In this document: in pieces, positions 1 through 23,167 of the stretch
Position numbering within the stretch: the first letter of the stretch is position 1
Layout: each line of letters opens with the position of its first letter
Source: Haplodiscus bocki
Lineage: Eukaryota
Direction of reading: 5' to 3'
Assembly: GCA_965655095.1 (NCBI GenBank)
Contig: OZ296656.1
Coordinates: 71,238,001-71,302,000 of the forward strand
DNA: 64,000 nt
Notes under the pieces: generated by a model
What the model saw: the letters and a program-made list of their open reading frames with translations, nothing else
What the model was told of the DNA's origin: nothing
Database searches by the model: none
Position numbers and translations under genes: made by a program

Positions 1-23
1 TAAACTTCTACAATAACCAAGAA

Positions 24-1157
24 ATGTCACTTTACAACCAAGAAACAACAAACAATGTCAACCAAGAAATAATGAAACCAAGTTATTCTGGAATTGCGTC
101 GAACAATGTACCACCACCAAGAATTACGAACTTTTTAAAACTCAAGATCATTCCTCCATTCAACAAAGAGCATTTTGTAACAAAGAACACATTCGAATCG
201 GCTTCCAATCAATGTATTGCTACAATCCTAAGACAATTCTCTCCGGAACAACGAACAAAAATTACTCTGTCCAACACTTTTACGATTGTTGGAACCCGGC
301 GCCTGCATACATTTCATCTTGTTGCACCCACTGAGGCCGCGAGTACTGTTGAACGGTTACTATCTTCTGGAATCGAGTTACTTGGGAGAACTGTGTTCCC
401 CCAAAGTGACTCATTTGAACGGTGTATCCCTGGGATCTATCCAAAGTTTGTCCACATTCGCATCTTGCAATTACCATCAATTTGCCAGGATGACGAACTG
501 TCCGACCTCCTCCAACTTCCTGACTCAACGCAAATTACCTCGGTAAAGCACAATACAGAGGTATCAGCAATGATTCGTGTGGTATCCAAAGACCATGAAG
601 AGGAACTAAGACAATGGTCAATCAGGAATCATGAGAATGGAAATCTGCAATGGCATGATATCCCAATTTATGCATTCATCCCTGCGTTGCACCAGTGCCA
701 GCACTGTAAGGACAACAAACGACCTTTCCATGGGCATGACATTGCATGGTGTCGCCATGCAAGAGACGAAACGCAACAAAGAACAACAATTACCACAAAT
801 GACTGCAACCAAGAAGAACAAGTTTCACTCGGCAACCAAGCAACTATTCATGAAGTCTCCATTCCTGCTACTGGAGAAACCAATGACATTAACATGAACC
901 AAGATAACACTTCTGATAGCAACCAAGATAACAATGACAACCAAGAAGAAATCGAAGCTAACACCGAAACTGATGATGAACCTCAGAACCAATGGCAAAC
1001 AGCGCAACCAAGACATACAACAACAGCAACCAAGTCTCAGTCACAACCACCCAATCTCAAGCAGACTAAAAGGAAAGCGGACAAAGCTCGACTTTTTATG
1101 ACCAAGAATTTTTCGACTCATACGCCTGTAACTAAGAGGAAAAAACCTGCAAAATAA
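24..1157 (+). CDS. E1 ORF1 nucleic-acid-binding (gag-like) protein, N-terminus probably outside the window
   Basis: Homologous to the ORF1s at 4848, 17589 and 28483 (LKLKIIPPF, GRTV.P, YPK..IRILQLP, CQHC-x9-H-x4-C, acidic linker, basic tail). Lacks the IDGM.FYNGRA segment seen in its paralogues. Confidence 0.8.
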   Translation: MSLYNQETTNNVNQEIMKPSYSGIASNNVPPPRITNFLKLKIIPPFNKEHFVTKNTFESASNQCIATILRQFSPEQRTKITLSNTFTIVGTRRLHTFHLVAPTEAASTVERLLSSGIELLGRTVFPQSDSFERCIPGIYPKFVHIRILQLPSICQDDELSDLLQLPDSTQITSVKHNTEVSAMIRVVSKDHEEELRQWSIRNHENGNLQWHDIPIYAFIPALHQCQHCKDNKRPFHGHDIAWCRHARDETQQRTTITTNDCNQEEQVSLGNQATIHEVSIPATGETNDINMNQDNTSDSNQDNNDNQEEIEANTETDDEPQNQWQTAQPRHTTTATKSQSQPPNLKQTKRKADKARLFMTKNFSTHTPVTKRKKPAK

Positions 1158-1180
1158 TCTTTTTTCTTTCATGATTCCAA

Positions 1181-4100
1181 ATGAATGTTTTCTCTTTAAA
1201 TTGTCGAGGTCTGAAAGACCATCGACGTCTTCAAATAATTGTGAATCAATATCTAAAACACTCAGACCTCGACAATCTTTGCATTTGCTTGCAAGAAACT
1301 AAGATTTCTAATATAACTAATAACCATCTAAAAATCCTGGAGCACTATCACCTTTCATACAATATATATCCATCAGAAGGTCAATCTGGGGGACTTCTGA
1401 CAATTTTTCCAGAAAACTACATACTGCTCAACTCGTATAAATCATCAAACACAATAAGTCTCCACTTTTCTCAACATAATTACACAATAACTAATACATA
1501 CATCAAACCGACTGACTACCACCTCCAACAATTTTTATCGGATATTCTTGTTATTGAAAACTTTCAATGCAATACTCACGTCATTTGTGGAGACTTCAAC
1601 GCCCTCCCATCATCTGACTGCACTTCCAATCGTCATGTGCCACATAATGACTTCCGTCTTCTCAGATATCATCGTATTATTGACATTCTTCAAAATCTTC
1701 ATGTTGTACGTGTTGAAGCTCAATCACCATCAACTAAATTCACACATTTTGATAAAAGATGTAACTCTTCCAGTCAAATTGACCACTTTTTCACTAACCA
1801 ACCTCACTTTGTCTATGAGACAACCAAAATCTCTTTCTCTGATCATGCTCTTCTTTCTCTTGTTATTTCCAATGTAGCTATGACTGGTACCAGCTACTGG
1901 AAACTTAATGATAATGCATTGCAACATCATGCCTATATAGCAAGCATTCTCTCGGATTCCCTACAAATGTCTCACAATCAGAGTAATTTGCACTTGCACT
2001 ATTACGATCTCGTTAAAAATAAAATGAGAGATGGTCTTCGTTCTCTATGCATTTACTTACATCGCCAGGCAATTCATGAGGAGCGATAATTGAGTGTAGA
2101 AATCACAAAGGTAGAAAATGAAATCTCTAATAATAGTGCTGATCCCGTTCTAATTAAACAATTGTCAAACTTAAATTCACAATTCTTGAACTACCAGATT
2201 ATGAAAGCCAAAAAAGACTTCAAACAAATCAAACAATATTTTACAGACTGTCATCATGGCGACTCACATTCTGTTAAGAAACTCATCCGCTCCCGTAGAC
2301 AAAAAACTAACATCGAATCAATTGACTTACCAGATGGTTCCTCCACATTTAACATTGATGACATCTTCCGTGAGTTCCACAACCATTTCCCTCAGCGTTT
2401 CACACAGCCACTCTACACAACACCAGACACAATTTCTCACTTCTCAAACATTGAGGACATTTTACAACCATTTCTAACAACACACTGGAATGCAATACAG
2501 GATAATATTGCTCAAAATACTAATCATTCACAGGTAACAGAACAAGAGGTTGAAGAGGCTATTAAAAAACTTAATTCAAATAGTGCTCCAGGATTAGATG
2601 GTTTAACATCTAACTTTTATAAAGCAAATGCAAATTTTTTGTTCCGTACTTAACTACTATATTTAACTTAATAATTATACATAATTGGGTTCCTGAATCC
2701 TTCACAAGAACTGTAATTAAATTAATTCCGAAAAAACCGGTTTCACGTACGGTTGAAGACTATCGTCCGATTAGCCTTATTAATACTGATCAAAAAATTC
2801 TGTCTCATCTTCTTGCCAATCGCCTAAAAAAATCACTGACGTCCCTCATTGGCTCACACCAAACTGCATATCTTCCTCAACGCTCAATTCACTCCTGGCT
2901 TACCCAAGTTAATCTAAACTTAGAACAACTCACTGATGAGGATTGTCTTGTTGCCTGTGATTTTAGCAAAGCTTTTGATAAAATCAACCGAACCTATCTT
3001 TTTGCTCTCCTACAACAAATCGGCCTCCATCCGTCTACTCTTGGTCTCATCAAAGCAATGTATCACCATACAGATGCATTTCTTGATATCAACGGATCGC
3101 TATCTCCGGTTATTTATATGACTAATGGTGTCCGTCAGGGCTGTCCACTTTCTTCTCTTCTCTTTATACTTGGCATTGAACCTTTCCTATTTCATCTCCA
3201 ACACAACAGCTCCATTCAATCATCTATCCCTTTCAAAATTATAGCATATGCGGACGACATTACATGCTGCCTCAAGATCAAAAGCCTCAAAAATCTCTTC
3301 TCTACTATCAATACTTTCTCTTCGGTTACAAATCTATATCTAAATCTACAAAAAAACTGAGATCTTATGCTCTGGATCACTTCCGCATGGTTTGCTATCG
3401 GTTCCCACTATCAAAATTTTAGGTGTGGAGTTTACTTTAAATAATTTAGCAATCCAAATGAACTCTGCGATCCTACAGGCACACAAATCCCGAATTTTTT
3501 GTAATCCATATAATACCTTTCTCGCTCGCGCCAAAAATGTTGAGACATTTGTTATGCAAAAACTCATTCACCAAATTCGCCATAAATATGTCTTGAAGAC
3601 GCAACTGGAAAAAATTGATAATATTGTTGTGGATTCAATCTGGTTAGGACGTAAACACAATCTGAAGAAAACTATTCTCCAGAAACCGTGGGCATCCATG
3701 GGAATTGGTCTTAAAAATTTTACACAGGTTATCACTGCAGCTAAAACTATTGACTATAAAAATTTTCTTCACTCAAACCCTACAAGCAATCAATACAGCC
3801 TCTTTCGTAAGTCCAAACTCTTCATCAATTTGAGACGCCTACTGCGGACCTTCAACTGTACCATCAGTACGGATAATTCCTCTCAAATAATTCTCTGCAA
3901 ATCATCTCAAATCTTAGTAATCACTCCATTAATGCGTACTCGTGAAGTTTATCGTTTTCTTAGCTCCACAAATACTCATGAATCGGTCTCGCGTCTTACA
4001 CAACTTGCGTCCCGTCTCAACTATCCACCAGACTTAATCTTTTTGTTTCTTCGGCGCCTATGGAAGCACAAAGCATATGCAGCTTTTGAGAAAAACTATC

Positions 4101-4432
4101 TCTACCAATTTTTCATGAACTGTTACTTAGACAAAACCATCAAATTCCAACATGGCTGGAGTGACACTCCTTTCTGCTGTTTCTGTGGCTCTGCCGAGGA
4201 AACTTTCCATCACTTGCTTTCCGTATGTCCCAACATTCCTCATTTGAATCTCTTTCCAACAATAGGTCACCCTCAACTGAACTTCCAGCACTCGAGTGAC
4301 ATTTATCCTTTCAAACGACTCATTGCGCTTCTTATTTGTTCATGGAGCAACGACTCGCACAAATTTCAAAAGTATTTCTTAAATTGTGTGAAGCTCAGGA
4401 ACCCTACTATTAGTCTTAATATTAATACATAA
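1181..4432 (+). pseudogene. E1 ORF2 (APE endonuclease + reverse transcriptase + zinc finger), disrupted
   Basis: LNCRGL, LQET, GDFN, IDH, SDH (APE); APGLDG, GVRQGCPLS, YADD (RT); CCFC..ETFHHL..C. Stop at 2087-2089 and frameshifts. Confidence 0.93.
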
Positions 4433-4603
4433 ACACTTGGAACTAAGCTCGGCACGCAACCAAGTTCTTAAGATTCCTTGAATTTCTCTGTCAACTTAGA
4501 TAACTGTAAAGTTTTTTTGATTAATGATTCTTTATTTTGTTGTGTGTGTGTGTTTTCGCCTTGATTGATATGTAGAATACTTTAATGAATAAATTCTTTA
4601 AAA

Positions 4604-6111
4604 GCCTAACTGTTGATAACGCCTTTTGATTGTGATAGCTATTACTCGCTTGAATCCTTGGCTCGCTATTAATTGGCCGTCTCCTGTTGACTCAGGATTC
4701 TTGTCAATTTTTACCACATACTATTGTGGTGAAATTATCATTTGGAAATTGGAATTTATTCAAGTCTTCATTACCTTGCTTACGACCTGTGCTGGAATTG
4801 TGCTACAACTGAATTCTTTTCAGTTCTAGTTCAACCTCTATTACATAATGGAACAACCAACGGCCCTGCTCGACAACGTCTCTTCTTCTTCTTTAGCAAC
4901 CGGCAACCCGACAACGGCTAGACCATGTTATCTAACTCCTGAACAACGCGTACAATTCTACAACCAAGCACCATCAATGAACAACCAAGAATCTCCACTG
5001 CAAAACCAAGATGCACCACCTCAATCTATCACTAAATACATTGACCAAGCACTTCAGCAACCAAGTTACTCTGGAATTGCAACTGATAACCAAGCACCTC
5101 AACAACCAAGTTACTCTGGAATTGCATGCAACAACATTCCTCAACCAAGAACCATGAACATTCTCAAACTCAAAATTATCCCACCATTCAACAAAGACCA
5201 CTTCGCAACCAAGGAAACCTTCGAAACAGCCTCCAACCAATGTATCGCTGCTATTCTACGTCAATTCTCGCCGCAACTAAGAACGAAACTAACTATCTCA
5301 AAAACCTTCACCATGGTCGGAACACGCAGACTTCATACTTTCCACATTGTTGCTCCAATCGAGGCCACTGAAGTATTTTCTCGACTCCAGTCAAGTGGAA
5401 TTGAGATGCTAGGAAGAACAGTCATTCCCCAGGGTGACTCTTTTGAACGCTACATCCCAGGAATCTATCCGAAACACACTCCGGTACGAATCCTGCAACT
5501 TCCCTCACTGTGCCACGAACAAGAGATCCACGATATTCTTGATTTACCAGAATCCACTGAAATTACGTCTCTACGCCACAATACCGATGTGATCGACGGC
5601 ATGAATTTCTACAATGGGCGTGCATCAGCCATGGTTCGGGTAGTTTCAAAAGAACATGAGCAGATGCTACGTGAATGGTCGATCCGAAGTCATGAAAATG
5701 GGACACATGAATGGAACGGCATTCCAATTTATGCATTTATACCCTCACTTCATCACTGTCAACATTGTAAGGTTCACCGTCGGCCCTTCCACGGCCATGA
5801 CATTGCCTGGTGTCGATATGCAAAGGCCGATGAGCAACTAAGAACAATTCCTACTCCCAACAATGGCAACCAAGAGATCTCTGCTCAACCAAGTAACAAC
5901 GTCTCAACTTCTGAACCCACCGCTCAAACTGATGAAACTAATGTATCGAATGTGACTCCTGACGAAACCTCTGATGAAACTGACAACCAAGAAGATACTG
6001 AAACAAACAGCGAAGAAGATGACTCACAACGCCCATGGCAGACTGCACCCACACACTCAACCAAGACTCTATCTGCAACTAAGACCCAATCGCAACCATC
6101 TCCGTTTGACA
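4604..6111 (+). mobile_element. E2: family A element, 3'-truncated within ORF1
   Basis: Near-identical to 17343-18851. ORF1 from 4848 breaks at TTTGACA (6111) and joins the next unit's motif directly. Confidence 0.92.
5044..5135 (+). repeat. Two-copy 45-bp in-frame repeat in E2 ORF1 (QA.QQPSYSGIA); also in E5
   Basis: Visible in both DNA and translation. Confidence 0.85.
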
Positions 6112-6290
6112 GCCTAATTGTTGTGATAGCTCTTCTTGCTTGAATCTGAACTCTATTGCTGCTGATATTACAGCCTTTGTTGTGATTAATCATCGCTTGT
6201 AAAAGCGTTGTATTCACGTTACCTTGTACGTTACCTTGTGTAACCTTGTGTATTTACCTTGCCTATTTATTGTTAATATGACATTACATT

Positions 6291-7577
6291 ATGCCTTCTA
6301 TCCAAAAATTTCTGGAGTCACCAGTGACCAAGAAAAACTTTCCTAAATACCCTCATTCTCAAAACAAAACACCACAAAACAACTCAACAGAACCACAAAT
6401 TATAACAGAAACAACAACACAAATTGAAGAAGTGAAGAAAAATCCTGAACCTGCCCAAGTGCAACAAACTTCAGCCTCAGCATCTTACAGCGAAAGCGTC
6501 CAGACAGAGGCTCGAACTCGATCACAACGGATTATCAGAATGAAAATTGTACCACCATTTCGACGCGATCACTTCCAGTACCCCCAACTTCTCCAACAGG
6601 ATATCGACAAAGCCATGTGTGAAATCCTAAATGCATTCCAAATGAAACATCGCAATAAAATCACAATTTCCAGAACTAACCTAATGCAACAAGGCAGGAA
6701 CCTCCAAATCTTAATGGTAACGGCCCCAGGAGAGGCGGAGGAGGACGTGGCCAGAGCCAAACTATCCGGACTCCAAATCATGGGAAGAACGGTATTTCCA
6801 ACAGGGGACGAATTCTGGCGTTACTCCCCAAGCGAATATCCGAAGCGAGCTATGATAAGGATAACCAATTTACCTGTATTACTCGACACCGATGAACTGG
6901 AAGAATTACTGAATCTACCACCGGAAACTGAACTTAATGACCTCATGGAGAGAGAGACGGTGACTACAGAGGCAGGAAAAGTCCACACCGGACGAGCTCG
7001 AATACCAATTCTAATTCAGTCAAAATCGCATGAAGAAAAACTGTTTACATGGTCCATGTGGAGGAATTCCGACGCTGGGAGACTGGAGTGGAACGAGATC
7101 CCCATATACATGTCGATTCCCAGGCTCCACAAATGTGTAAGATGCGAAGCTGAAGGTCGCCGACAGTTCGTCGGCCATGACGAAAAGTGGTGCCGAATCG
7201 TCCGCCAGACTACGAAACCCCCTGAAGAAGATCCTCAAGTCCATGAAAAGATAGAAGATGAAGAGCAGACGGTGGCTGAAGGTGAAGTTACACAACAGAC
7301 TGGAACAGAAGTAGAGGAGGAAAACGTCAATGAAAACCCCACATCAACTGAAACAGAAGAAGACGAGGATACCCAAAGCTCAGAAGAAGAGGACAATTGC
7401 AACCATGAAAACAAAGACATGACGAATGAGGGTGAGGCAGAACACACAGGGAACAAATGGCAACCGGCAAAAAAGAAAAAGAGGAAAAGAAGTAAAGAAT
7501 CATCGAAAAGCAAAACTACAATAAGAAGCAAAACGGAAGGACCGAAAAGGAAAAGTAGGAACTATATTAATGACTGA
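6291..7577 (+). CDS. E3 ORF1 protein (428 aa, open)
   Basis: MKIVPPFRRDHF, GRTVFPTGDEFW, RITNLP, TGRARI, CVRC-x10-H-x4-C, acidic region, KKKKRKR basic stretch. Confidence 0.85.
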   Translation: MPSIQKFLESPVTKKNFPKYPHSQNKTPQNNSTEPQIITETTTQIEEVKKNPEPAQVQQTSASASYSESVQTEARTRSQRIIRMKIVPPFRRDHFQYPQLLQQDIDKAMCEILNAFQMKHRNKITISRTNLMQQGRNLQILMVTAPGEAEEDVARAKLSGLQIMGRTVFPTGDEFWRYSPSEYPKRAMIRITNLPVLLDTDELEELLNLPPETELNDLMERETVTTEAGKVHTGRARIPILIQSKSHEEKLFTWSMWRNSDAGRLEWNEIPIYMSIPRLHKCVRCEAEGRRQFVGHDEKWCRIVRQTTKPPEEDPQVHEKIEDEEQTVAEGEVTQQTGTEVEEENVNENPTSTETEEDEDTQSSEEEDNCNHENKDMTNEGEAEHTGNKWQPAKKKKRKRSKESSKSKTTIRSKTEGPKRKSRNYIND

Positions 7578-10500
7578 TCTTTCCTTTTTGGAGTCGTTAG
7601 ACTTCTTTTCTTTAAATGTAAGAGGGCTCAGTAACCCTGAGCGTCTTACTGAGGTATGTAATATTACAAAAAATCAAAGTAAAAGTAACAAAATAATCAT
7701 AGCATTACAAGAAACTAAACTAATGAAAATGAAGGAGGCACATTATAGGATCATCAAAAAATTTGGTTTTTCGCACGAAATGGTTCCTGCTAATAGCAAT
7801 GCAGGAGGTCTCATGATTCTTTATCCAAAAGATTGTCAAATGACCCCTATGATGAAAAACGAAAACTTGCTGGCTATTGTTCTGAATCTTAATGGGTGTG
7901 AAAACTCAATAATAGCAAATGTATATATTAACCCAAAAGACCACAAAATCGAGAAATTTAGGAAGTCTTTTGAAGAGCTTGATCATACAAATCCTATCAT
8001 AGCAATGGGAGACTTTAATGCGATTGATTACGAAAATATCGTGGAAAATCAAAAACCTCCAAAAACCAATGATATAAGAGTTTTACGTTACAATAAAATC
8101 ACTCAAATTTTTGGTGGTCAAAAGATGTATGACTTAGGCAAAGCCCTAAGCATAACACGACCCACCCATTATGACAAAAGAACAAGAGCCAGCAACCTAA
8201 TTGACTACTTTTTCGGTAACTTTCCCTCCGAAAACCTGGAGATGTCTCTCTATATAACTTCCTTCTCGGATCATAAATGTTTACATCTTACGTTTAATGT
8301 CAACCAAACCTCAATGGGTAAAGGTATCTGGCGTCTGAATGACGAGATCTTAGAGGATAAAACCATGATTACCCAAATATTACACCAATAATTTGAATCC
8401 AATCACTGTAATGCAAAAAACTACGATATTTTCAAATCGAGAATCCGTGACGCTCTTAGAATAATCTGTATCAGAAACATAAAAAAGAAGAAAATGCTAG
8501 AGAAACAACTCATGAAAGAAGTTGAAAACTCAGAGAGACATCTCCAGGCAAAAATTAAAGCAGATCCAAAAGACCTCAAGGATCATGAAGATAAAATTCT
8601 AAATCTTAAAACCTTCCAGCAAAAAGAAGCAACACTTATTGCGAAATCTATTAAAAATCTTTATCTTGATGTTAGTGAAGGAGATCCGAAAACCACAAAA
8701 CTTATGGTGAGGTGTATGCAAAGCAAACAAGAAATCAGAAAAATTATCACAAAGTCAGGCGAAGCCGTAACTGACCAAGATGAAATTGTTGATAAATTTG
8801 CGGAATTTTTTGAGGAATGCTATCAAAAAAATCAAACTTCTAATGAAAAAATCAGCCAGTTATATCTAAATAACTTCTTCCAGAAGAATGAAAAAAAGCT
8901 CAGGAAGTTTGAACTTGGCGAAATATACAAAAACAATGATGATAACCCAATTACAGAATTCGAAGTTGAAAAAGCAATAATGAAACTCAATAGCAGAAGT
9001 GCACCAGGTTCAGATGGCCTCACCTCTGACCTCTATAAAACTCAAAAAGAATTCTTTGTTCCGCTTCTAACTAAGCTTTTCAATGACATATACAAAACCT
9101 CAAATGTTTCTCCTTCATTTGAACAAGCCATCATAAAAGTAATACCAAAAAAACCAAACGTATATGATATCGGCAACTTCCGGCCCATCAGTCTTATAAA
9201 TACGGACCAAAAAATCCTATCACACATTTTAGCCTTCAGATTAAAAAAAGTGCTTGACATATTGATTGGGCCACATCAAACAGCCCACCTTACAAACAGA
9301 AACATTAACCTTTCATTAATGAAACTTTAAACCTTTGCCACTAAAATGTCGAAGAGAGAAGGTATTGTTGCTTTAGATTTCAATAAAGCCTTTGATAAAG
9401 TAGATCGAAACTATATGATGAACCTCATACATCACCTTCCGATTGATTGTCAAACCAAAAACATTATAGAAAAAATGTATGAAAACACGAGAGCACTAGT
9501 AAATGTTGGAGGTGTTTTTTGAGCTCCCTTCAAAACTGAAACTGGTGTCCGCCAAGGTTGCCCAGTCTCAGCTCTAGTGTTTAATCTCGCGATTGAACCT
9601 TTGTTACAAAGAATTCAAAGATCAAAGCTCATTCAATCCTCTCAAAAAACCAAATGTGTTGCGTTTGCAGATGATGTCTCCATTTGCATGAACTTGCACT
9701 CCATTCGCAACCTTAGGACTTCTCTAAATAATTTTGCAAAAATATCTGGTTTGACAGTCAATATAAATAAAAGCAAGGTCCTAACACAAGGGAAAACTTA
9801 TAAACAGGAAAAATGGAAACTTGAGAAAGTATCAAAAACAAGAATCCTCGGGTTAAATATCAACATTGGCAGCAAAATCGATATCCAAACCAAAAACGAT
9901 CTTATCAACACAGCAAGAAAATCATCTCTGTATGTAGGACCTACTGTATCTCTCTACGCTCGTGCAAAAAACATAGAAACGTTCATCCTTCCAAAACCTA
10001 TCTACTCTTTAAGACACTATACAGCGATAAAAACGTTATTAAGAAAACTGAATTGTCAAATGATCAATCAACTGTGGCTAGAGAAGAAACATAACGTCAA
10101 CCAAGAAATTGTCAATACTCCTATCAAAGATGGAGGGATAGGCTTGAAAAACCTCGAAAAGTGTGTATTAACAGCCAAGATAATGAACCTCAAATTATTA
10201 GCATTTAATCCAATGGAAACACACTTCCTCACGTTTCAAAGAAAGCAAAGCTTTCAGTCTCCTGGAAAAATATCTGAAAGACTCCGGCATTGAAATTCTG
10301 GAACTCTCCCAACAAAAACTGACTATTCAATACTTCTTCCAAAATATTGAAATCACGTCATCGACAACTTCAAAAGAACTCTATGAGTTTCTAGTCAAAT
10401 CCATTATCGCGATACCATGTTTTAAACACATCAAATGTCTGCAATGAAAAAGCAAATTTCTCCCAACATAATTTTTGACTTCATAACTCGAATATGGAAA

Positions 10501-10851
10501 AACAGGAGACTCAAATCGTTCGATAAAAACATTTTATATAACTTCCTAATGAACGCCTACCTCGATAAACAAGAGAAATGGTTGAAAAACTTAGTGCCTC
10601 ACCCTCTCTGTTTTGCATGTGAGGAGTACTTTGAAACTTGGCATCACCTAATGTTTGAATGCCCGAAACTAGCGCCAACCATAAAAGCTCTCAATATCAA
10701 ACACTGGAGTGACGTCTTCCAAGACAAAACATACGTAACACCAAAAGTACTAGTAGCAATAATACTATCCTCCTGGACTGAAAGCCCAAGAAAATACCTA
10801 AACTTTTTTCTTAAAAAAACAACGCTATCATATGAGTTACATACCTCGTAG
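7570..10851 (+). pseudogene. E3 ORF2 EN-RT, disrupted
   Basis: LNVRGL, LQET, GDFN, SDH, APGSDG, RPISLINTDQKI, FADD, CFAC..ETWHHL..EC; in-frame stops at 8391 and 9330 plus further lesions. Confidence 0.93.
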
Positions 10852-11006
10852 GTTTTTGAAGTCTATTTTGATATTCTGTTGATAAAATTGATTTATATTT
10901 GATTTCTTTGTGTTTTGATTTGATTTGATTCATTGATTTGTTTATTTTTATTTTTCTTTTCCATGATACTTGTAGATATTTAGTTGTAATAATACATTAT
11001 TCAAAA

Positions 11007-11440
11007 GCCTAATTGTTGTGATATCGCTTACGATTGCTTGCTTGCCTTGCTTGAATCTAGCTGATTGCGCGCATAGATTGGCTGTCTCCTGTTGATTGAG
11101 GATTCGTTACGTCTTGTGGTTCTCATTTCATCACATTTTTTGGGGTGAAAAACATTACTTCGAAATCTTCTTGCTTATTAATTCTTATTCATTGTTACAT
11201 TTCGCTTTGCTTTACATCGCTGCTTGTTCTGAACGGTCAACGCAGTGTCCTCACCCTGTGAATACTGAACTTGATTCAGTTTCAGCACCACAATTCAACA
11301 ATGGAACGACCACAGGCCCTGACCGACAATGTTTCTCTCTGTCCTCCACTGAATATTGGCCCTTCCGAAATGGCACGACAATGTCAAATGAAACTTGAAC
11401 AACAAAGAATACAATTCTACAAGAACCAAGGAACTTCATC
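11007..11440 (+). mobile_element. E4: family A 5' fragment (5' UTR and first codons of ORF1), 3'-truncated
   Basis: Starts with the junction motif; near-identical to 43522-~43946; homology stops near 11440. Confidence 0.88.
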
Positions 11441-14400
11441 ATAAAAAGAATCAAGAAAGAAAAAAGTTAAGCCACCGCCACTCAATTAAACAAAAACACC
11501 TACACACACGTCACACAAAGAACGAAACGTTTATCGTGATAAGCTGCCATTGCCAGAATTTCACAAAGCCGGAAAGGAGCTACAGTTGAACTTTAATGCC
11601 ATACGTAGTGTTCAGAAAAACCAATAGACAGGGTCATTCTGCAAAAAACTCATTTAGGGAATTGACATTGAAATCTTTTCCTGATAACGTACGAAGAGAT
11701 TGCTGCCTCGCAGTAGAAATCTCGAAACTGCTAATAGTGAAAATCGATGCTAGCATTCTGGACAAAAACTTTCGAGAAACCCTTTATTTGGAAAACATTA
11801 CTGAAAGGCAATCAAAGCTTCGAAACTTCAACTAAAACATTTGTTTCAAAAATGAAGTATATCCCTTGCTTCCATCACACCTTCCCAACTGCGACTACTA
11901 GGAAAAAAACTTGATAGATTGCTATAAAGACAATAGTGTTCCAGAAAAACTCTTTTTTTTTCTTCCATTAAAGTAGCTGAAAACAACTGAATTTTGGAAA
12001 TTAAATTGAAAAATATCCGCAAAATGCGTGGAACAGGGCGGACTTGACGAAACTTCCTGAAGTAAATACTATCTATTCCAGAAGACATATGCCAGACAAT
12101 CAAAGATCTTCGGGTAAATCACATTTGAAAACATCATTCTAAAAATAATCTAAATTTCGATGTTTAGATTGAAACACTTGACCAAAACATTAGAGAGTAG
12201 TGGCTCTCCACAGACTTTTGTAACTCCAAGTAGCAAAATGGAAAGTTCAAGATTTCAACCGAAGTAAGTTAATTGAAAAGATTCAGTCTGAAAAAAACTC
12301 AGGTAACCTAAAGAATCCTTCCCAGCGTGTTCAACTTTTATTTCGACTGTTCCTTCTCATTTTGTACATCTACAAGACGGAAAAATGATATTTTCGAGAG
12401 ACCACTGATTTTCACCACCGCAACAACTCTCCCTCCTACGCTGTAAAAAAAAACAAGCAAATTTTAACTAAATTGAGTTGCTAACGTGCAGACAAAACAG
12501 GAACGTCATTCGTACTAAAGTGGCGTTGCCAGTTTAAACACAGAGGCGAATGGGAGCTTGAAAAAAGTGGCAGCAAGACAAGCTACGATTGAACCTCAAT
12601 CCGCTCAATTATGTTCCGGAAAATCGCCTTCAAGAACATCAAATTGATAATTATTCAAAATTCGAGGTTTATATAATTTTTCCACATAATAGGCTTTAGG
12701 CAGACTTCCTCAATGCAAATAGGATGCCTCAGCAAAAGAAAGTTGCAATGGAACCAACAGTGTTCACAGAAAGACATTCAAAAGATTAATTCTGCTAGAA
12801 GGTAATTTGAGAAAACTTCAAATTGAAACGTTCGGATGATGTCCGATAATGGACACCGTATTGAAACAAATAGCATTTTGGGGCCTTCCTCAATTCGAAA
12901 CGCTGCTTCAGTTCCTAGACGGCCAGTAGGGGTACCTAACTAGTCTGCATCGAGGAAAATATCCGTGGGGTTGAATTGCTCCGCTTTGAAGTCTAGATTA
13001 GCCATTTACCCTAAACGCGATTGATGTTTCAATTGTTGCATTGTTATGACCAATATTCAATATTGGGGAGCAGAATTCAACTTTTGTCTGAATCCATCTT
13101 TTGGATGCGGCTGCTAACCATGGGCGCTTGGCTTGACTATTTTTCAAAGACATTTGATGCGGCTTCAGTTCGATCGCGGCCATAAATCAATTAAACACGT
13201 ATCCCATCACTCGTTTCGAACAGACTTTCCAAACTGCCAGGACTTGGTTCAAAATTGGTACATTGCAATTAGGCCAATAGTGTTGAAGAAAGTACCTAAG
13301 AAATCATTCTACTAAAAATATATATCTAAAACACGACCTTTGAATTGAACTATTTTAAGTTTAATGTATGAAAAAGTAGATCTCTTGCTCTCTGCCGTTA
13401 TTCCAAAGTGCCCGTAGCTGTATTAAAAATGTATGCTTGCAATCTGATCAACAGGTAATGAGAAAAATGCCGTCTGAAAAAAATTTGGTCAAATGAATTA
13501 CAAGTCATTCGAGCAGTCCCATCTTCAATTTTGTCTTTTCTCGTCCTATCATCTACTTTCGTGAAAAGGCTTAAAAGACATTTTGTTAGATTTTGAATGC
13601 TTTGACCATCGCGGTGATATTCCAACCATCCTTCTAAGCACTAAGCGGAACAAGCCATCATTAATTAAGGCGAGTTGTTAACGTGCAGATACGAAAATTT
13701 CGATCGTAATAAGCTGCCGTTGCATTAACACTAAGACATTACAGGGCCATTAATTTTGCATATTAATATTTTCGTGACGGTGCTCGTCCAGTGGTTTCAA
13801 CGGCTGTCACCCACTTGTAGGTCCAAGGCGACCAACCCGTTTCTGCACGGAGATCCCAAGGTGCCAGCATTAACGTTGCAAAGCTTGTCATGGTTATGAT
13901 CCAACTAAGACGGTCTTCGCTGCTCAAACCATGGCGTAGTACATACACCTCAAGAGGCCATCTTTATAATTCCAGAAATGAAGCCAGACTAAATGTTAAT
14001 GAATTCGTGCTTATATATACGATGTTTCTGTTCTCTGGATTACTGTTTCCAGACTCTTATCAATGGTATATCGAGAGTTGGTTACGGTCTGGCAACTCGC
14101 CGATTTTCTTCCCAGCGAAAACTCAAAAAAACATGGTCCATTTTCTATCAAGTTTCCGTATTTTAGTACAGCACACAATGAAGCTGGTTCAATTTTGCGG
14201 GCAGGCTGACACGAAATTTATGCAAATGCCAGCTTTGATTCCAATTTATGACAACAATGAACTTCAAACAAAAATGGAAAGTTGAAATATTTTCATCAGA
14301 ATTTCATATTTTCATTGAAACGATCAGAGCGTCATTAAAGAAACTATAGCCGACAACAAGCCGGCAACAGCGCGCAAGGTACAAACCAAAATACTCGAAA

Positions 14401-16016: not shown

Positions 16017-17342
16017 GAAGAAAATAAATTGAGTCAGGTAGTTCCCATTCTAGTCAGGAAGAAAAGAATGAATAAGAATAATGAATTGAGAGATGAAGAA
16101 AAGAAAATTTTTCAATATAATTTGAACGAATTCAGTTAGACTATTGTGCACTTTCCCATGCGACAGAAAACATATATTGATAAAACTTTCAAATACATTA
16201 AAAGTAAGAATTCATTTGATATAATTGTGACAAGACGAAACATCATGAGGAGGGAATGAAACTCTTTGATGTAGATTTTTCGATTTACAAGCAGATACTA
16301 GTTTTCTTCTCCTACTCACGTGAGACAGCACAACGTACAATAGCAAACTGGTTCCAAATACAATATGACAGCACTTTTGATACCCAAAACAGCTCGAAAA
16401 TGATTCTATGGAAAAAGTAAATAATACGTCGCAGATTACATCAGCCGCTAAATATTTCTTTCGAGTTTACTTTTGGTAGCTTTATGCCGAACGATACCTT
16501 CAACACCGCCGTTCTGACGCCGATATTTAGCGAAGTGGTAACACTCGATGTCAATTACTGATTTTTCAGATGGTGAGCCGCAGTTTCGAACACAATGAGC
16601 AAATACAAAGATGCCGCATTTTCCAAGATTAGGCTAGATGAAGTTATGAAACTCGCTAAAACGCGCATTTCCGCGGAAACAATGATTGAAATTCCGATTA
16701 CATGCACCAAAGTTACGCGCATACACAGAGCAACTATTAGCAACTATGCATAAAACCCTCCGATAAACTTCATTCAAAAGTTAAATTTTAGCCAAGTATT
16801 GCTCGCATTCACATTGAATTTGCAAATATCTCGGAAAATTAAAAAAAAAAAAAACGTTGCGCGATAGATGGGGGTACATCTATCAAATCGTTATCTAATT
16901 ACTTGCACAGCTAGCTGATCAAGGATACGTGCCAGTAGACGGCTACTTTTGACCGTTTCAAAATGATCACTACATCAATTCTCAACCGACGGAATCGCAT
17001 TTTTCGAAAAATCTGTTCCCAGCGATGCCAACCTGCAGGCAAAACCTTTTCCATATCAAACTTTTATGATATCATGATATAACTTTTCATTGCAAACAAT
17101 TTTTCGTAGACATGCTAATCATATCTGAGCCGTCACTAATTTATGCATTTCACGGTGTACTACCATTGCATAGTCCAACTTACTATATGCCCTCCAAAGC
17201 ACTTTTTTTTCTGTTAAGAAATGCATAAAAAACACTAAATAACAAAATGTGTCTTAACTCAGTCTCCAAGTTGTGCAAGCTGTTATTTGTAGCTTAAGTA
17301 CTTTTCAAGGAACGCGATCCAAGCAACTATAGTTCGCTTTTA

Positions 17343-17359
17343 GCCTAATTGTTGTGATA
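17343..17359 (+). other. Conserved unit-start motif GCCTAATTGTTGTGATA (representative copy; also at 4604, 6112, 11007, 23168, 28204, 33195, 38442, 43522, 45288, 50345, 52333, 57673, 59331, 61318)
   Basis: Read directly at all 15 unit starts, always preceded by A. Confidence 0.95.
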
Positions 17360-17588
17360 ACGCCTTTTGATTGTGATAGCTATTACTCGCTTGAATCCTT
17401 GGCTCGCTATTAATTGGCCGTCTCCTGTTGACTCAGGATTCTTGTCAATTTTCACCACATACTATTGTGGTGAAATTATCATTTGGAAATTGGAATTTAT
17501 TCAAGTCTTCATTACCTTGCTTACGACCTGTGCTGGAATTGTGCTACAACTGAATTCTTTTCAGTTCTAGTTCAACCTCTATTACATA

Positions 17589-18955
17589 ATGGAACAACCA
17601 ACGGCCCTGCTCGACAACGTCTCTTCTTCTTCTTTAGCAACCGGCAACCCGACAACGGCTAGACCATGTTATCTAACTCCTGAACAACGCGTACAATTCT
17701 ACAACCAAGCACCATCAATGAACAACCAAGAATCTCCACTGCAAAACCAAGATGCACCACCTCAATCTATCACTAAATACATTGACCAAGCACTTCAGCA
17801 ACCAAGTTACTCTGGAATTGCAACTGATAACCAAGCACCTCAACAACCAAGTTACTCTGGAATTGCATGCAACAACATTCCTCAACCAAGAACCATGAAC
17901 ATTCTCAAACTCAAAATTATCCCACCATTCAACAAAGACCACTTCGCAACCAAGGAAACCTTCGAAACAGCCTCCAACCAATGTATCGCTGCTATTCTAC
18001 GTCAATTCTCGCCGCAACTAAGAACGAAACTAACTATCTCAAAAACCTTCACCATGGTCGGAACACGCAGACTTCATACTTTCCACATTGTTGCTCCAAT
18101 CGAGGCCACTGAAGTATTTTCTCGACTCCAGTCAAGTGGAATTGAGATGCTAGGAAGAACAGTCATTCCCCAGGGTGACTCTTTTGAACGCTACATCCCA
18201 GGAATCTATCCGAAACACACTCCGGTACGAATCCTGCAACTTCCCTCACTGTGCCACGAACAAGAGATCCACAATATTCTTGATTTACCAGAATCCACTG
18301 AAATTACGTCTCTACGCCACAATACCGATGTGATCGACGGCATGAATTTCTACAATGGGCGTGCATCAGCCATGGTTCGGGTAGTTTCAAAAGAACATGA
18401 GCAGATGCTACGTGAATGGTCGATCCGAAGTCATGAAAATGGGACACATGAATGGAACGGCATTCCAATTTATGCATTTATACCCTCACTTCATCACTGT
18501 CAACATTGTAAGGTTCACCGTCGGCCCTTCCACGGCCATGACATTGCCTGGTGTCGATATGCAAAGGCCGATGAGCAACTAAGAACAATTCCTACTCCCA
18601 ACAATGGCAACCAAGAGATCTCTGCTCAACCAAGTAACAACGTCTCAACTTCTGAACCCACTGCTCAAACTGATGAAACTAATGTATCGAATGTGACTCC
18701 TGACGAAACCTCTGATGAAACTGACAACCAAGAAGATACTGAAACAAACAGCGAAGAAGATGACTCACAACGTTCATGGCAGACTGCACCCACACACTCA
18801 ACCAAGACTTTTCTGCAACTAAGACCCAATCGCAACCATCTCCGTTTGACACAACCAAGAGGAAAGCAGAACATAACAAAACACGACTCTTCACGGCGCA
18901 CAATCTGACACTCCAGATGCCTGCTCCAAAGAAGAAAAAGAAACCAACGAAATGA
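17589..18955 (+). pseudogene. E5 ORF1, frameshifted near the C-terminus
   Basis: 439-aa ORF matching E2 ORF1; the basic tail KKKKKPTK-stop lies in another frame ending at 18955. Confidence 0.8.
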
Positions 18956-18982
18956 TCTTAGTCCTTAGTTTTCATTTATTTT

Positions 18983-21900
18983 ATGATGAATGTTTTCTCC
19001 TTAAATTGTCGAGGTCTGAAAGACCATAGACGTCTCCACACCATTGTGAATAACTGTATACGAAAACTTTCAGACATCGACAATCTTTGCATGTGCTTGC
19101 AAGAAACTAAGCTCTCTAACCTAAGTAATAACCATCTAAAGATCCTGGAGCACTATCATCTTTCCTATATTCTATATCCTGCTGATGGTCAATCAGGAGG
19201 ACTCCTCACGATTTTTCCAAAAAAAATTTACAGTGCTAGGGACACATAAGTCACCTAACACAATAAGTATCCACTTTTCTCAACATACTTTCACATTAAC
19301 AAACATCTACATCCATTAACAAACATCTACATCAAACCGACTGACTACAAACTTCAACAATTTTTATCAGACATTCTTGCTATTGAGCAATTTCATTGTG
19401 ACACTCACATTCTATGTGGTGACTTCAATGCGTTACCATCAGCTGACTGTACTTCCAGCTGTCATGTTGCAAATAATGATATCCGTCTTCTTAGATATCA
19501 TCGTATCCTTGACATTCTTCATAATCTTCATGTGGTACGTGTTGAACCACACTCACCATCGACGAAATTCACGCACTTTGACAAGAGGACTGGCTCTGCT
19601 AGTCAGATTGATCATTTTTTCACTAATCAACCTCACTATGTATATACTACAACAAAAATTTCCTTTTCCGATCATGCTCTTTCTCTAGAAGTTTCAGATC
19701 TAACTATGACAGGTTCCAGCTACCGGAAACTTAATGACAATGTATTGCTCCATCATGACTATATCACAGGCATCATCTTCGACACTCTACACACCTCTCA
19801 CAATTCAAATAACCTCACGTTACACCATTATGACCTTGTTAAAACCAAAATGAGAGATCGTCTTCGTGCTTTATGCATCTTCTTGCATAAGCAGGCACTT
19901 CATGAAGCGAGATACTTGAATGCCGAAATTTCAAAGCTTGAACATCACATCTACAATAATGATGCTGACCCTGTTCTGATTAAACAGTTGTCCACTTTAA
20001 ACTCGCAACTCATGAATTATCAAAGTATGAAAGCCAAAAAAGACTTTAAACAAATCAAACAATATTTTACAGACTGTCATCATGGCGACTCACATTCTGT
20101 TAAGAAACTCATCTGCTCCCGTAGACAAAAAACTAACATCGAATCAATTGACTTACCAGATGGTTCCTCCACATTTAACATTGATGACATCTTCGGTGAG
20201 TTCCACAACCATTTCCCTCAGCGTTTCACACAGCCACTCTACACAACACCAGACACAATTTCTCACTTCTCAAACATTGAGGACATTTTACAACCATTTC
20301 TAACAACACACTGGAATGCAATACAGGATAATAATGCTCAAAATACTAATCATTCACAGGTAACAGAACAAGAGGTTGAAGAGGCTATTAAAAAACTGAA
20401 TTCAAATAGTGCTCCAGGATTAGATGGTTTAACATCTAACTTTTATAAAGCAAATGCAATTTTTTTTTGTTCCGTACTTAACTACTATATTTAACTTAAT
20501 AATTATACATAATTGGGTTCTTGAATCCTTCACAAGAACTGTAATTAAATTAATTCCGAAAAAACCGGTGTCACGTACGGTTGAAGACTATCGTCCGATT
20601 AGCCTTATTAATACTGAGCAAAAAATTCTGTCTCATCTTCTTGCCAATCGCCTAAAAAACTCACTGACGTCCCTCATTGGCTCACACCAAACTGCATATC
20701 TTCCTCAACGCTCAATTCACTCCTCGCTTACCCAAGTTAATCTAAACTTAGAACAACTCACTGATGAGGATTGTCTTGTTGCCTGTGATTTTACCGACTA
20801 ACATCATGGAGACTCACACTCGGTCAAAAAACTCATTTGCTCACGTCGGCAAAAATCCAACATAGAATCTCTTGACTTGCCAGATGGCTCTACCACATTC
20901 AACATTGACAACATGTTCTATCAATTTCACCACCACTTTTCTCAACGTTTCACACAACCGATCCATGCCACATCAGACCCAACTTCTCACCTCTCTAACA
21001 TTGAGAACCTTTTACAACCTTTTCTCAGCACACATTTGAACGCAATACAAGCTAACATAGCTCAACATACCCATAACTCGCATGTAACAGAACAGGAAGT
21101 GGAAGAGGCAATTAAAAAACTTAACTCCGGTAGTGCTCCAGGATTAGATGGTTTAACATCTAATTTTTACAAAGCTCATGCAAACTTTTTTACTCCATAC
21201 TTAACTATCATTTTTAACTTAATGATCTCACATAACTGGGTTCCTGAAGCCTTCTCAGGAACGGTGATTAAGTTAATACCGAAAAAACCGGTTTCGCGTA
21301 CGGTCGAAGACTATCGTCCGATTACTCTTATTAACACTGATAGAAGATTCTATCTCATCTTCTTGCGAATCGCCTGAAAAAGTCCCTGACCACACTCATT
21401 GGTCCCCACCAAACTGCATACCTTCCTCAACGGTCAATTCATTCTTCGCTTACTCAAGTAAATCTAAACTTAGAATACCTCACAGAGGAGGATTGTCTAG
21501 TTGCTTGTGACTTTAGCAAAGCTTTTGATAAACTCGACCGAACCTATCTTTTTGCTCTCCTACAGCAAATTGGCCTCCATCCGTCCACTCTTGGTCTCAT
21601 CAAACTCATGTATCACCACACTGATGCATTTCTTGATATTAACGGATCGCTATCTCCAGTTATTAACATAACTAGTGGTATCCGTCAAGGATGTCCCCTT
21701 TCTTCGCTCCTCTTTATTCTTGGCCTCGAACCTTTCCTGTTTCATCTCCAACATAACACCTCCATCCAATCATCTAGTCCTTTCAAAATCATAGCTTATG
21801 CAGATGACATTACATGTTGTCTTAAAATCAACAGCCTCCAATATCTCTTCAATACTATCATTTTCTCGTCTGTCACTAACCTGTATCTGAATCATCAGAA

Positions 21901-22978
21901 AACTGAGATCTTATGTTCTGGCTCACTCCCAAGTGGCTTCCTATCAGTTCCCACTGTCCAAATCTTAGGTGTTCAGTTTTCCATAAATAACTCAGCGATT
22001 CAACTGAATTCCGCAATCTTGCAGGCGAACAAATCACGGCTTTTCTGTAATCCATATAATACGTTTCTCGCTCGCGCCAAAAACGTTGAGACTTTTGTTA
22101 TGCAAAAACTCATTCATCAAGTTCGCCATAAATATGTATTGAAGACGCAGCTAGAAAAGCTTGACAATATCTTTGTCGATTCCGTCTGGTTAGGACGTAA
22201 ACATAACATGAAGAAAACTATCCTCCAGAAACCGTGGGCTTCCATGGGAATTGGTCTTAAAAACTTTACGCAGGTTATCACTGCGGCCAAAACTATTGAC
22301 TTTAAGAATTTTCTCTACTCGAATCCTACCAGCAATCAATACCGTCTCTTTCGTAATTCTAAACTTTTTTCCAACATGAGACTCTTACTGCGAACCTTCA
22401 ACTGTACCGTCAGTTTAGATAATACTTCTCAAGTACTTCTCCGCAAATCATCTCAAATCTTAGTTCTTACTCCATTAACGCGAACTCGTGAAGTCTATCG
22501 TTTTCTTAGTTCCACAAATACGCATGATTCTCTCTTGCGTCTAACCCAACTGGCGTCTCGCCTCAATTACCCACCCGATCAAATTTTTATGTTTTTGCGG
22601 CGCCTATGGAAGCACAAATCATATGCAGCGTTTGAGAAAATCTATCTCTATCAATTTTTCATGAACTGTTACATGGATAAAACTGTTAAATTCGAACATG
22701 GATGGACTGATACTCCTTTCTGTTGTTTCTGTGGCTCTGCCAACGAAACCTTCTACCATCTTTTATCGGAATGTCCGAATATTCCTCATCTAAACTTCTT
22801 TCCAACCACAGATCATCCGCAACTCAACTTCCATCTCCCCAACGATTATTACCCCTTTAAACGGCTCATCGCTCTCCTCATTTGTTCGTGGAGTAATGAC
22901 TCGCACAAATTTTCAAAATATTTCATTAACTGTGTGAAACTCAGGAACCCCACTATAAGTTTACATACTAATCTTTGA
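18983..22978 (+). pseudogene. E5 ORF2 EN-RT, disrupted and partly duplicated
   Basis: MNVFSLNCRGL start; APGLDG and RP(I/S).LINT occur twice; GIRQGCPLS, YADD, C-terminal CCFC finger. Confidence 0.92.
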
Positions 22979-23167
22979 CAATAGTAATCTAAGTTTTAAT
23001 CATAACTACGTTTGAATTATAACTAAGCTTTGAGCATGATCAAGTTTGAACTGCCACTATGATACCTTTGATATACATTTCTGGATTTCTGATTTCTGAT
23101 AGATAACTAATCATTTGTCTCACTAATCATTTGTATTAAGATACTTGAATGAATTAATTCTTTAAAA

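What the first reader, a model, noticed from the sequence alone, without database searches (positions are those of the whole stretch)
6095..6135. A 3'-truncated unit is fused exactly to the first base of the motif, suggesting the motif travels with the RNA (end-to-end template jumping)
Seen: E2 ORF1 runs ...TCCGTTTGACA straight into GCCTAATTGTTGTGATA, whereas its twin E5 continues ...TTTGACACAACCAAG (18841-18860). The rest of E2 does not reappear downstream. A random deletion ending exactly at the motif is unlikely. Known: R2 RT jumps from the 5' end of one RNA onto the 3' end of another. Inference: the arrays may arise as cDNA concatemers of different RNAs, each beginning with the 17-mer. Alternatively, EN cleavage at the motif triggered a deletion.
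Basis: partly seen in the sequence, partly recalled or inferred. Interest (0 to 1): 0.75.

Follow-up and report, generated by a model that had tools for sequence, protein, structure and literature searches.

The report
Broken LINE copy at spliced-leader target
The repeated 17-letter motif is the start of this acoel worm's spliced-leader RNA gene, which several jumping-gene (LINE) families use as their only landing site; the one broken copy joined to its first base marks the enzyme's fixed cutting point and does not show that the arrays are built by template jumping.

Summary
E2 (4604-6111) is a 99.3% twin of the first 1.5 kb of E5. It stops 57 nt before the ORF1 stop and joins base 1 of GCCTAATTGTTGTGATA (6112) with no filler.

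The 17-mer is nt 1-17 of the published 31-nt spliced leader (SL) of Symsagittifera roscoffensis. The arrays are pile-ups of L1-like (APE+RT) LINEs inside SL RNA genes. They are headed by an SL promoter (window 16921-17342), and elsewhere they end in an intact SL gene. Every 3' end joins at SL position -1/+1.

The motif does travel with the RNA. An off-target copy on another chromosome carries it inside its own 13-bp target duplication.

The template-jump and concatemer reading is not supported:
- Among all 136 exact-motif sites genome-wide that do not simply continue as the SL, E2|E3 is the only broken element abutting base 1.
- E3 has no relative closer than about 90%, while E2 and E5 differ by 0.5%. 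Co-insertion is therefore unlikely.
- The two off-target insertions read in full are single units.

Most likely E2 was laid down later at E3's motif from a 3'-incomplete RNA, or lost its tail to an endonuclease-triggered deletion.

An earlier scan finding (s1-364264) read adjacent DNA as the same SL-gene pile-up.

The parts
1..4603 (+). E1, an A-family LINE cut by the window start, with a canonical 3' end ...AATTCTTTAAAA
   Evidence: 78-83% to E5 and E7
4604..4618 (+). Degenerate copy of the 17-mer at E2's 5' junction (GCCTAACTGTTGATA: T>C and loss of TG)
   Evidence: 3 of the 10 E2/E5 differences lie here
4604..6111 (+). E2: motif, 5' UTR and ORF1 of an E5-type element, ending 57 nt before the ORF1 stop, with no 3' UTR and no A4 tail
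6111..6112 (+). The junction: last E2 base (A) joined to SL base +1 (G). No filler, at most 1 nt of microhomology.
6112..6128 (+). Perfect 17-mer, equal to nt 1-17 of the SL exon. The bottom-strand nick (TPRT priming site) lies just before its first base.
6112..11006 (+). E3, a B-family LINE with broken ORF2. Its 5' 1.5 kb is unique in the genome (no relative above 82%). Its 3' 3.4 kb is at best 90% identical to any other copy.
11007..11441 (+). E4: motif plus 434 bp of an A-type 5' end, 3'-truncated and followed by unrelated DNA (11442-16920)
16921..17342 (+). Diverged SL RNA gene promoter (74% to the promoter of the SL-5S array genes). It heads the second array.
17343..23167 (+). E5, the probable source locus of E2, interrupting the SL exon after nt 17. 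It is itself a chimera: part 1 runs to 20793 and part 2 starts at 20788, with a 730-bp overlap region present twice and ATTTTA microhomology at the joint.
43522..45287 (+). ORF1-only derivative (motif, 5' UTR, ORF1, then about 180 bp of 3' UTR). Its internal break lies 3 nt after the ORF1 stop.
52333..57672 (+). Element with an intact ORF1 (53147-54241) and an intact 1090-aa ORF2 (54234-57506: APE, RT, zf-RVT)

Best explanation
The motif is nt 1-17 of the spliced-leader (SL) exon. Several L1-like LINE families (APE endonuclease, RT, C-terminal zinc motif) insert only there. Their endonuclease nicks the bottom strand exactly opposite SL position -1/+1, so every element's 3' end (A3-4) is joined to base 1 of the motif. 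The 5' side ends after nt 17, which leaves one 17-mer on each side of an insert and regenerates the target. Arrays therefore grow by repeated insertion downstream of an SL promoter. That promoter transcribes the elements from +1, so their RNA begins with the 17-mer (inferred from DNA). E2 is a recent copy of the E5-locus transcript that arrived at the motif of the older E3. I commit to this mechanism: reverse transcription was primed at that nick on an RNA that ended near the ORF1 stop, so the 3' part of E2 was never copied. The junction is therefore an ordinary 3' (TPRT) junction made on an incomplete template. It is not a jump from E3's RNA.
For: Identity of the motif: the published SL of S. 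roscoffensis starts with these 17 nt. Real SL genes (SL exon, GTAAG intron, 5S rRNA gene) form a large array 1.2 Mb away on the same contig. Insertion anatomy: L069 reads promoter | nt 1-17 | 1.6-kb element | A4 | nt 1-31 | GTAAG. There are 22 such A3-4 + intact SL gene tails, 30 promoter-headed motif+element sites and 19 canonical element-end|motif sites. Nick specificity: both off-target copies have 3' flanks that resemble the start of the SL (GCCTTATG, GCCTCATT). RNA carries the motif: L067 has a 13-bp TSD (GCCKTATGTTAAA, 12 of 13 matching), then 7 extra nt, then the full 17-mer and the element. A-type 5' UTRs also keep a second, decayed 17-mer copy. E2 is a retrocopy and not a DNA duplicate: its homology to E5 starts at the motif, and 3 of the 10 differences fall within the 17 nt of its 5' junction. 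Order of events: E2 and E5 differ by about 0.5%. E3's 5' half has no relative above 82% and its 3' half none above 90%. E3's ORF2 is broken. The E3-E4 block has 87-91% paralogous blocks in the window. RNA-level break: E2 ends 57 nt before the ORF1 stop, and two other breaks or switches (45105, 7592) also sit at the ORF1/ORF2 border.
Against: This is one event only, so no statistics are possible. No RNA data could be obtained, so the transcription start at +1 and the existence of RNAs ending near the ORF1 stop are inferred. The conserved 3' terminus shared by all families suggests the RT recognises its own 3' end, which would make a tail-less RNA a poor template. The same region holds DNA-level deletions (E4 at 11441; a chimera in L070 whose right edge lies 13 bp upstream of the nick), so an endonuclease-triggered deletion of a once complete E2 fits almost equally well. 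Dating E3 by its nearest relative assumes that its source copy was not simply lost.
Confidence: 0.4

Rival explanations
1. Endonuclease-triggered deletion. E2 first inserted full-length upstream of E3. A later cut at E3's motif (-1/+1), or an aborted insertion there, was repaired with about 4.3 kb of resection on the upstream side only.
For: The right edge is exactly the nick site used by all elements. The neighbourhood holds other DNA-level truncations: E4 and the L070 chimera, whose right edge is 13 bp from the nick. The join has at most 1 nt of microhomology, typical of end joining. This reading fits E2 being younger than E3.
Against: It needs one-sided resection of 4.3 kb with the 17-mer kept to the base. 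The left edge falls within 60 nt of the ORF1 stop (about 2% by chance for a random deletion endpoint). No other such deletion is seen among about 80 element-type motif junctions.
Confidence: 0.28
2. End-to-end template jump. The RT copied E3 RNA to its 5' end (the 17-mer), then jumped onto the 3' end of a truncated E2-type RNA, so that E2+E3 entered as one cDNA. Arrays would be such concatemers.
For: The E3 motif is complete and the join has no filler. The RNA does carry the 17-mer. Internal, microhomology-mediated switching seems to occur in this family (E5 chimera). 25 dispersed sites (about 19 separate events after collapsing local duplicates) have a 3'-cut SL fragment, most often ending at nt 17, fused to base 1 of a full SL. 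L067 has 7 extra nt before its motif that resemble an element 3' end.
Against: E3 has no relative closer than 82% (5' half) or 90% (3' half), and E2 is 99.3-99.5% identical to E5, so the two are not the same age unless E3's source was lost. The E3-E4 block has old paralogues. It is the only such junction among 136 exact-motif sites. The two off-target insertions read end to end (L067, L068) are single units, and two more have no element sequence in their 400-nt upstream flank. Arrays start at SL promoters and end in intact SL genes, as stepwise targeted insertion predicts.
Confidence: 0.1
3. Deletion at E3's own 5' junction. E3 inserted after E2. Its cDNA end (which carries the 17-mer) was joined to an upstream target end that had lost its own motif and the 3' 4.3 kb of E2, as in L1 insertion-associated target deletions.
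For: The RNA carries the motif, so a perfect 17-mer could come from E3's cDNA. The E5 chimera (a 3'-cut part joined to a 5'-cut part without a motif) looks like such an event.
Against: It requires E3 to be younger than E2, contrary to and to E3's broken ORF2.
Confidence: 0.1
4. Chance deletion or assembly error unrelated to the endonuclease.
For: Arrays of near-identical repeats are prone to misassembly and rearrangement. Tandem 8,986-bp block duplications occur here.
Against: Junction k-mers occur in contigs of 3 runs from 2 samples at single-copy depth. A random endpoint hitting base 1 (within 1 nt) is about 2 in 5000 per event.
Confidence: 0.05

Closest known systems
SLACS / CZAR / CRE1-2 (trypanosomatids) and NeSL-1 (nematodes): SL-exon-specific non-LTR retrotransposons
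   Same: They insert at one fixed position inside the spliced-leader exon of tandem SL RNA genes. The insert is flanked by duplicated target sequence. From my own knowledge, SLACS is reported to be transcribed from the interrupted SL gene's promoter at +1, so its RNA starts with SL nucleotides. PMC4640811 lists SL exons as known targets.
   Different: Those elements carry a restriction-like endonuclease (CRE and NeSL groups). The elements here have an APE endonuclease and an L1-like ORF2. The host is an acoel. The split is after nt 17 with the nick at -1/+1, and the elements pile up into long mixed head-to-tail arrays of several families.
Target-specific APE LINEs of the Tx1 and R1 clades (Tx1, Keno, Mutsu; R1, TRAS, SART)
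   Same: An APE endonuclease with sequence-specific nicking, multicopy RNA genes or repeats as targets, a short A-tail or none, and a precise 3' junction (PMC4640811 for the clades).
   Different: I found no report of an SL-gene target for this type in the searchable library. Clade membership was not tested. Outside acoel-like assemblies the closest proteins are at most 27% identical.
R2 end-to-end template jumping and U6/L1 chimeric retrocopies
   Same: The proposed product is the 5' end of one RNA joined to another RNA in a single cDNA.
   Different: In those cases the acceptor contributes its natural 3' end and both parts are the same age. Here the upstream partner is broken inside ORF1, the partners differ greatly in age, and the event is unique.
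L1 insertion-associated target deletions and R2 5'-junction deletions
   Same: Loss of upstream target DNA at a retrotransposition site, with a blunt or 1-nt microhomology join.
   Different: Here the preserved edge is the 3'-junction nick of the downstream motif, and the downstream element appears to be the older of the two.

Membership tests
SL-gene-specific non-LTR retrotransposons (functional class) | Insertion at one fixed position of the spliced-leader exon | tested here: met
   Promoter | nt 1-17 | element | A4 | nt 1-31 | GTAAG in L069. 22 such tails and 30 promoter-headed sites. SL sequence from PMC9911081.
SL-gene-specific non-LTR retrotransposons (functional class) | Transcription from the SL promoter, so that the RNA starts with SL nucleotides | tested here: inconclusive
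   Indirect support: the off-target copy L067 carries the 17-mer inside its own TSD. No RNA run was available.
CRE / NeSL groups (the known SL-targeting lineages) | Restriction-like (PD-(D/E)xK) endonuclease C-terminal to the RT | tested here: not met
   ORF2 has an N-terminal Exo_endo_phos (APE) domain and aligns with human L1 ORF2p over residues 12-872, E 2e-54.
L1 group (L1/Tx1-like LINEs) | ORF1 plus an ORF2 with N-terminal APE, RT and a C-terminal zinc motif | tested here: met
   PF03372/PF14529, PF00078 and PF13966 in the 1090-aa ORF2. The best solved relative is L1 ORF2p.
Tx1 clade | Phylogenetic placement of the RT within Tx1 | not tested
   No reference Tx1 sequences were at hand. The homolog search returned unnamed proteins only.
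Product of end-to-end template jumping | The two joined copies entered together and so are the same age | tested here: not met
   E2/E5 differ by about 0.5%. E3's nearest relatives are 82% and 90% identical. The test assumes E3's source copy is still in the genome.
Product of end-to-end template jumping | Recurrence: other broken elements or host RNAs fused to base 1 of the motif | tested here: inconclusive
   There is no other element-to-motif fusion among 136 exact-motif sites. However, 25 dispersed sites have a cut SL fragment fused to base 1 of a full SL.

The most novel reading that the evidence does not exclude
The RT of these SL-targeting LINEs, or of the LINEs that retrocopy SL-capped RNAs in this genome, habitually switches from the capped 5' end of one SL-bearing RNA onto a second RNA. 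In that case E2|E3, the roughly 19 independent dispersed [SL nt 5-17..19][SL nt 1-31] fusions and the 7 extra bases at L067 would all be footprints of the same reaction, and part of the array growth would come from multi-RNA cDNAs. The recurrent acceptor end at SL nt 17 would then point to a discrete 17-nt SL-derived RNA or DNA end, which is the same boundary the elements use.
Probability: 0.12. Interest if true: 0.7.

Novelty: new variant of a known kind. Interest (0 to 1): 0.45.

Why it matters
The junction itself is a single oddity. Its context is of wider interest. An animal (an acoel) carries several L1-like, APE-bearing LINE lineages that have converged on the lifestyle of the trypanosome and nematode SL-specific elements. 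They live inside SL RNA genes, appear to use the SL promoter, carry SL nt 1-17 on their RNA, and regenerate their own target so that mixed arrays build up. This gives a natural system for asking how an APE endonuclease acquires a 17-bp-precise target, and how homology between the cDNA end and the target shapes 5' junctions. The truncated copy and the SL-SL fusions offer concrete substrates for testing template use and template switching by such an RT.

Tried and rejected
- Spliced-leader addition by trans-splicing as the source of the 17-mer on array elements: rejected. Trans-spliced copies carry all 31 nt, array elements carry only nt 1-17, and there is no splice donor after nt 17.
- Segmental DNA duplication of E5 as the origin of E2: rejected. 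Homology starts at the motif, ends at the next motif, and the differences are concentrated in E2's 5' motif.
- Internal priming by complementarity between the nicked target and E5 RNA at the break: there is no complementarity (CAACCAAG against GCCTAATT).
- Premature polyadenylation: there is no AATAAA signal and no A-tail at the junction.
- E3 inserted into E2 at an off-target site: the remainder of E2 is not found after E3.
- A variant SL gene with a tandem 17-mer as the source of the SL-SL fusions: no full tandem [1-17][1-17] exists in the genome.
- Empty-site search for the L067 insertion: no paralogue found.
- TSD for L068: none seen.
- RNA evidence: no RNA runs were offered, so transcript ends could not be read.
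The census therefore rests on exact-motif pattern searches and misses junctions with mutated motifs.
- Pfam scan of 11441-13000 failed because of stop codons and was not pursued.
- The ENA contig carrying the chimeric ORF proved identical to the window, so it is not independent support.

Full report
**1. The observation**

Window 6101-6128 reads ...TCCGTTTGACA|GCCTAATTGTTGTGATA. The twin at 18841 continues TTTGACACAACCAAG.

E2 (4604-6111) matches E5 (17343-18851) with 10 differences in 1510 columns. It stops 57 nt before E5's ORF1 stop and has no 3' UTR or A-tail. The remainder of E5 does not reappear after E3.

The 17-mer occurs 12 times in the window with up to 2 mismatches, against 0.02 expected. 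Counting degenerate copies there are 15 unit boundaries:
- 13 follow the canonical element end ...TTCTTYAAAA;
- one (17343) follows unique DNA;
- only 6112 follows a broken element.

The junction sequence is unique in the genome. Its k-mers are present in Logan contigs of three runs from two samples at single-copy depth. The contig has 30 nt on the left side, one short of the tool's bridging rule. An ENA contig with the same chimeric ORF is 100% identical over 12 kb, so it is not independent.

**2. What the motif is**

The genome (1.5 Gb) holds 1455 exact copies. At 20 of 20 sampled dispersed copies the motif continues as (or close to) AACTTATTAAATAG and is then followed by diverse sequence.

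The 31-mer is the published spliced leader of the acoel Symsagittifera roscoffensis (PMC9911081). Real SL genes consist of the SL exon, a GTAAGT intron with a stem, and a 5S rRNA gene. They form a large tandem array on the same contig, 1.2 Mb from the window.

The 17-mer is therefore SL exon nt 1-17.

**3. What the arrays are**

Window 16921-17360 aligns at 74% to the SL gene's upstream region and its first 17-18 nt. The second array therefore starts at an SL promoter, with E5 interrupting the exon after nt 17.

In the true SL array, single insertions read promoter | nt 1-17 | element | A4 | nt 1-31 | GTAAG (L069). There are 22 such tails genome-wide.

I made a full census of exact 17-mers not followed by the SL continuation: 98 sites followed by a non-A base, plus 38 followed by A then a non-A base. 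The upstream context falls into these classes:
- about 30 sites with the SL promoter;
- about 19 sites with a canonical element 3' end;
- one 32-unit array on C10;
- SL-variant retrocopies;
- 4-5 off-target element copies;
- exactly one broken element, E2|E3.

The intact ORF2 (54234-57506) has APE, RT and zf-RVT domains. It aligns with human L1 ORF2p over residues 12-872. Close homologues (34-91% identity) come only from unnamed ENA assemblies, after which identity drops to 27% or less.

These are L1-like, APE-type LINEs of several families (A: E1, E2, E5, E7; B: E3, E6 and others; plus a third lineage and short units). All are specific for the SL gene. The same reading was reached earlier in this scan on adjacent DNA (s1-364264).

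**4. Where the enzyme cuts, and whether the motif rides on the RNA**

Every 3' end is joined to SL base +1, so the bottom-strand nick lies at -1/+1.

The two off-target copies have 3' flanks that mimic the SL start (GCCTTATG..., GCCTCATT...). Recognition therefore lies just downstream of the nick.

L067 has a 13-bp target duplication (GCCKTATGTTAAA, 12 of 13 matching). The upstream copy is followed by 7 extra nt, then the complete 17-mer and the element. The target there was not the SL, so the 17-mer came with the cDNA. This shows that the motif is part of the RNA, as expected if the SL promoter fires at +1.

A-type 5' UTRs also hold a second, decayed 17-mer copy right after the first, and another element holds three partial copies, all ending at nt 17. 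This fits both the target and the RNA contributing a 17-mer, with the two normally merged by homology. The recurrent TG-loss variant (4604, 38442) fits slipped pairing in TTGTTGTG.

**5. What the E2|E3 junction means**

Base 1 of the motif is the universal priming and nick site. Exact fusion there is therefore what any endonuclease-linked process predicts, and it does not by itself require the motif to belong to E3's RNA.

A random deletion endpoint landing there is unlikely (about 2 in 5000), so a link to the endonuclease is justified.

E2 is a retrocopy rather than a DNA duplicate. Its homology to E5 begins at the motif, and 3 of the 10 differences sit in the 17 nt of its 5' junction.

The timing of the two elements differs:
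- E2 and E5 differ by about 0.5%.
- E3's 5' half has no genomic relative above 82%, and its 3' half none above 90%.
- E3's ORF2 is broken.
- The E3-E4 block has 87-91% paralogous blocks in the window.

E3 therefore seems to have been in place long before E2. This argues against co-insertion (a template jump) and against a deletion caused by E3's own arrival. Two readings remain.

(i) TPRT at E3's motif on an E5-locus RNA lacking its 3' part.
- This is favoured slightly, because the break sits within 60 nt of the ORF1 stop. Two other breaks or switches also sit at the ORF1/ORF2 border (45105 and 7592).
- snRNA-type promoters are also expected, from general knowledge, to give short transcripts.

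(ii) A later endonuclease-triggered, one-sided deletion.
- The region does show DNA-level truncations: E4 at 11441, and a chimera in L070 whose right edge lies 13 bp upstream of the nick.

I put these at about 0.40 and 0.28. Template jump and E3-associated deletion each get about 0.10, and chance deletion or assembly artefact about 0.05.

**6. Concatemer origin of arrays**

This is not supported, for four reasons:
- Arrays begin at SL promoters and, in the SL array, end in intact SL genes.
- Neighbouring units differ widely in age.
- The two off-target insertions read in full (L067, L068) are single units, and two more have no element sequence in their 400-nt upstream flank.
- Multi-unit repeats in the window are DNA-level block duplications, for example 8,986 bp at 99.7% identity.

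**7. What keeps a door open for template switching**

E5 itself is a 3'-cut part joined to a 5'-cut part, with ATTTTA microhomology at the joint.

25 dispersed sites (about 19 independent events after collapsing local duplicates) carry a partial SL fused exactly to base 1 of a full SL. The partial copy usually runs from nt 5 to nt 17, less often to nt 18-19 or a few nt further. I could not explain these. No tandem-17-mer SL gene exists in the assembly.

**8. Limits**
- No RNA data were available.
- The census is restricted to exact motifs.
- Clade phylogeny was not done.
- L021 contains 200 N, which were left as they are.

Noticed in passing
Genome-wide, e.g. L071-L082 (C2:129716125, C4:95168454, C5:19008065, C6:67732431, C7:18690619, C12:55569527 and others): 25 dispersed sites carry a partial SL copy fused exactly to base 1 of a full 31-nt SL that heads a retrocopy. 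In the 12 loci I read, the partial copy always lacks the first SL bases (mostly starting at nt 5) and ends at nt 17 (7 loci), nt 18 (3) or nt 19 (2); the other sites end a few nt further on. No full tandem 17-mer exists anywhere in the genome. The recurrent end at nt 17 coincides with the boundary used by the SL-specific LINEs. Unexplained.
   Followed up: partly
window 20700-20900 (E5): E5 is a chimera. A 3'-truncated A-type part (to 20793) is joined to a 5'-truncated A-type part (from 20788). About 730 bp is present twice at 81% identity, the joint has ATTTTA microhomology, and there is no motif between the parts.
   Followed up: partly
window 11007-11441, then 11442-16920: E4 is cut after 434 bp and followed by about 5.5 kb of DNA unrelated to the elements, which runs up to the SL promoter that heads the next array. 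The nature of that DNA was not determined.
   Followed up: no
L070 (G000:C9:71213100-71216200), 25 kb before the window: A tandemly duplicated 2.36-kb block. In it the motif plus the first 141 nt of the E5-type 5' UTR (100% identical) is fused to the last 12-13 nt of the SL promoter plus GC, followed by a different short element. Promoter sequence lying downstream of an element fragment points to a DNA-level rearrangement or a read-through RNA.
   Followed up: partly
L067 (G000:C2:76377300-76384300, minus strand): An off-target B-type insertion with a 13-bp TSD. Seven extra bases (TTATCAA) lie between the upstream TSD copy and the 17-mer, and they loosely resemble an element 3' end (TTATTCAAAA).
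   Followed up: partly
window 50329-55015 vs 59315-64000, and L026: An 8,986-bp block of several units is tandemly repeated at 99.7% identity. A third copy appears to run into the next 10 kb and shares the GCCCCATTGTTGTGATA motif variant.
   Followed up: partly
G000:C10:82994670-83096575 (minus strand): About 32 motif copies spaced 2-3.3 kb apart, each preceded by ...TTTATTGGCAAATAAA. This is a long array of one short unit, probably a non-autonomous element or a tandem amplification.
   Followed up: no
window 4604-4618 and 38442-38456; also 57673-57686: Recurrent motif variants at 5' junctions: loss of TG within TTGTTGTG (twice) and loss of AAT (GCCTTGTTGTGATA). They suggest slipped pairing or RT slippage when the 5' junction forms.
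   Followed up: partly
window 6111, 7592, 45105: Three independent breaks or lineage switches fall at the ORF1/ORF2 border: the end of E2, the recombination point of E3, and the internal deletion of the 43522 unit.
   Followed up: partly
G000:C10:70931697-70932019: A 323-bp fragment 97% identical to the 3' end of E3. It is probably a heavily 5'-truncated dispersed copy of a close B-lineage relative.
   Followed up: no
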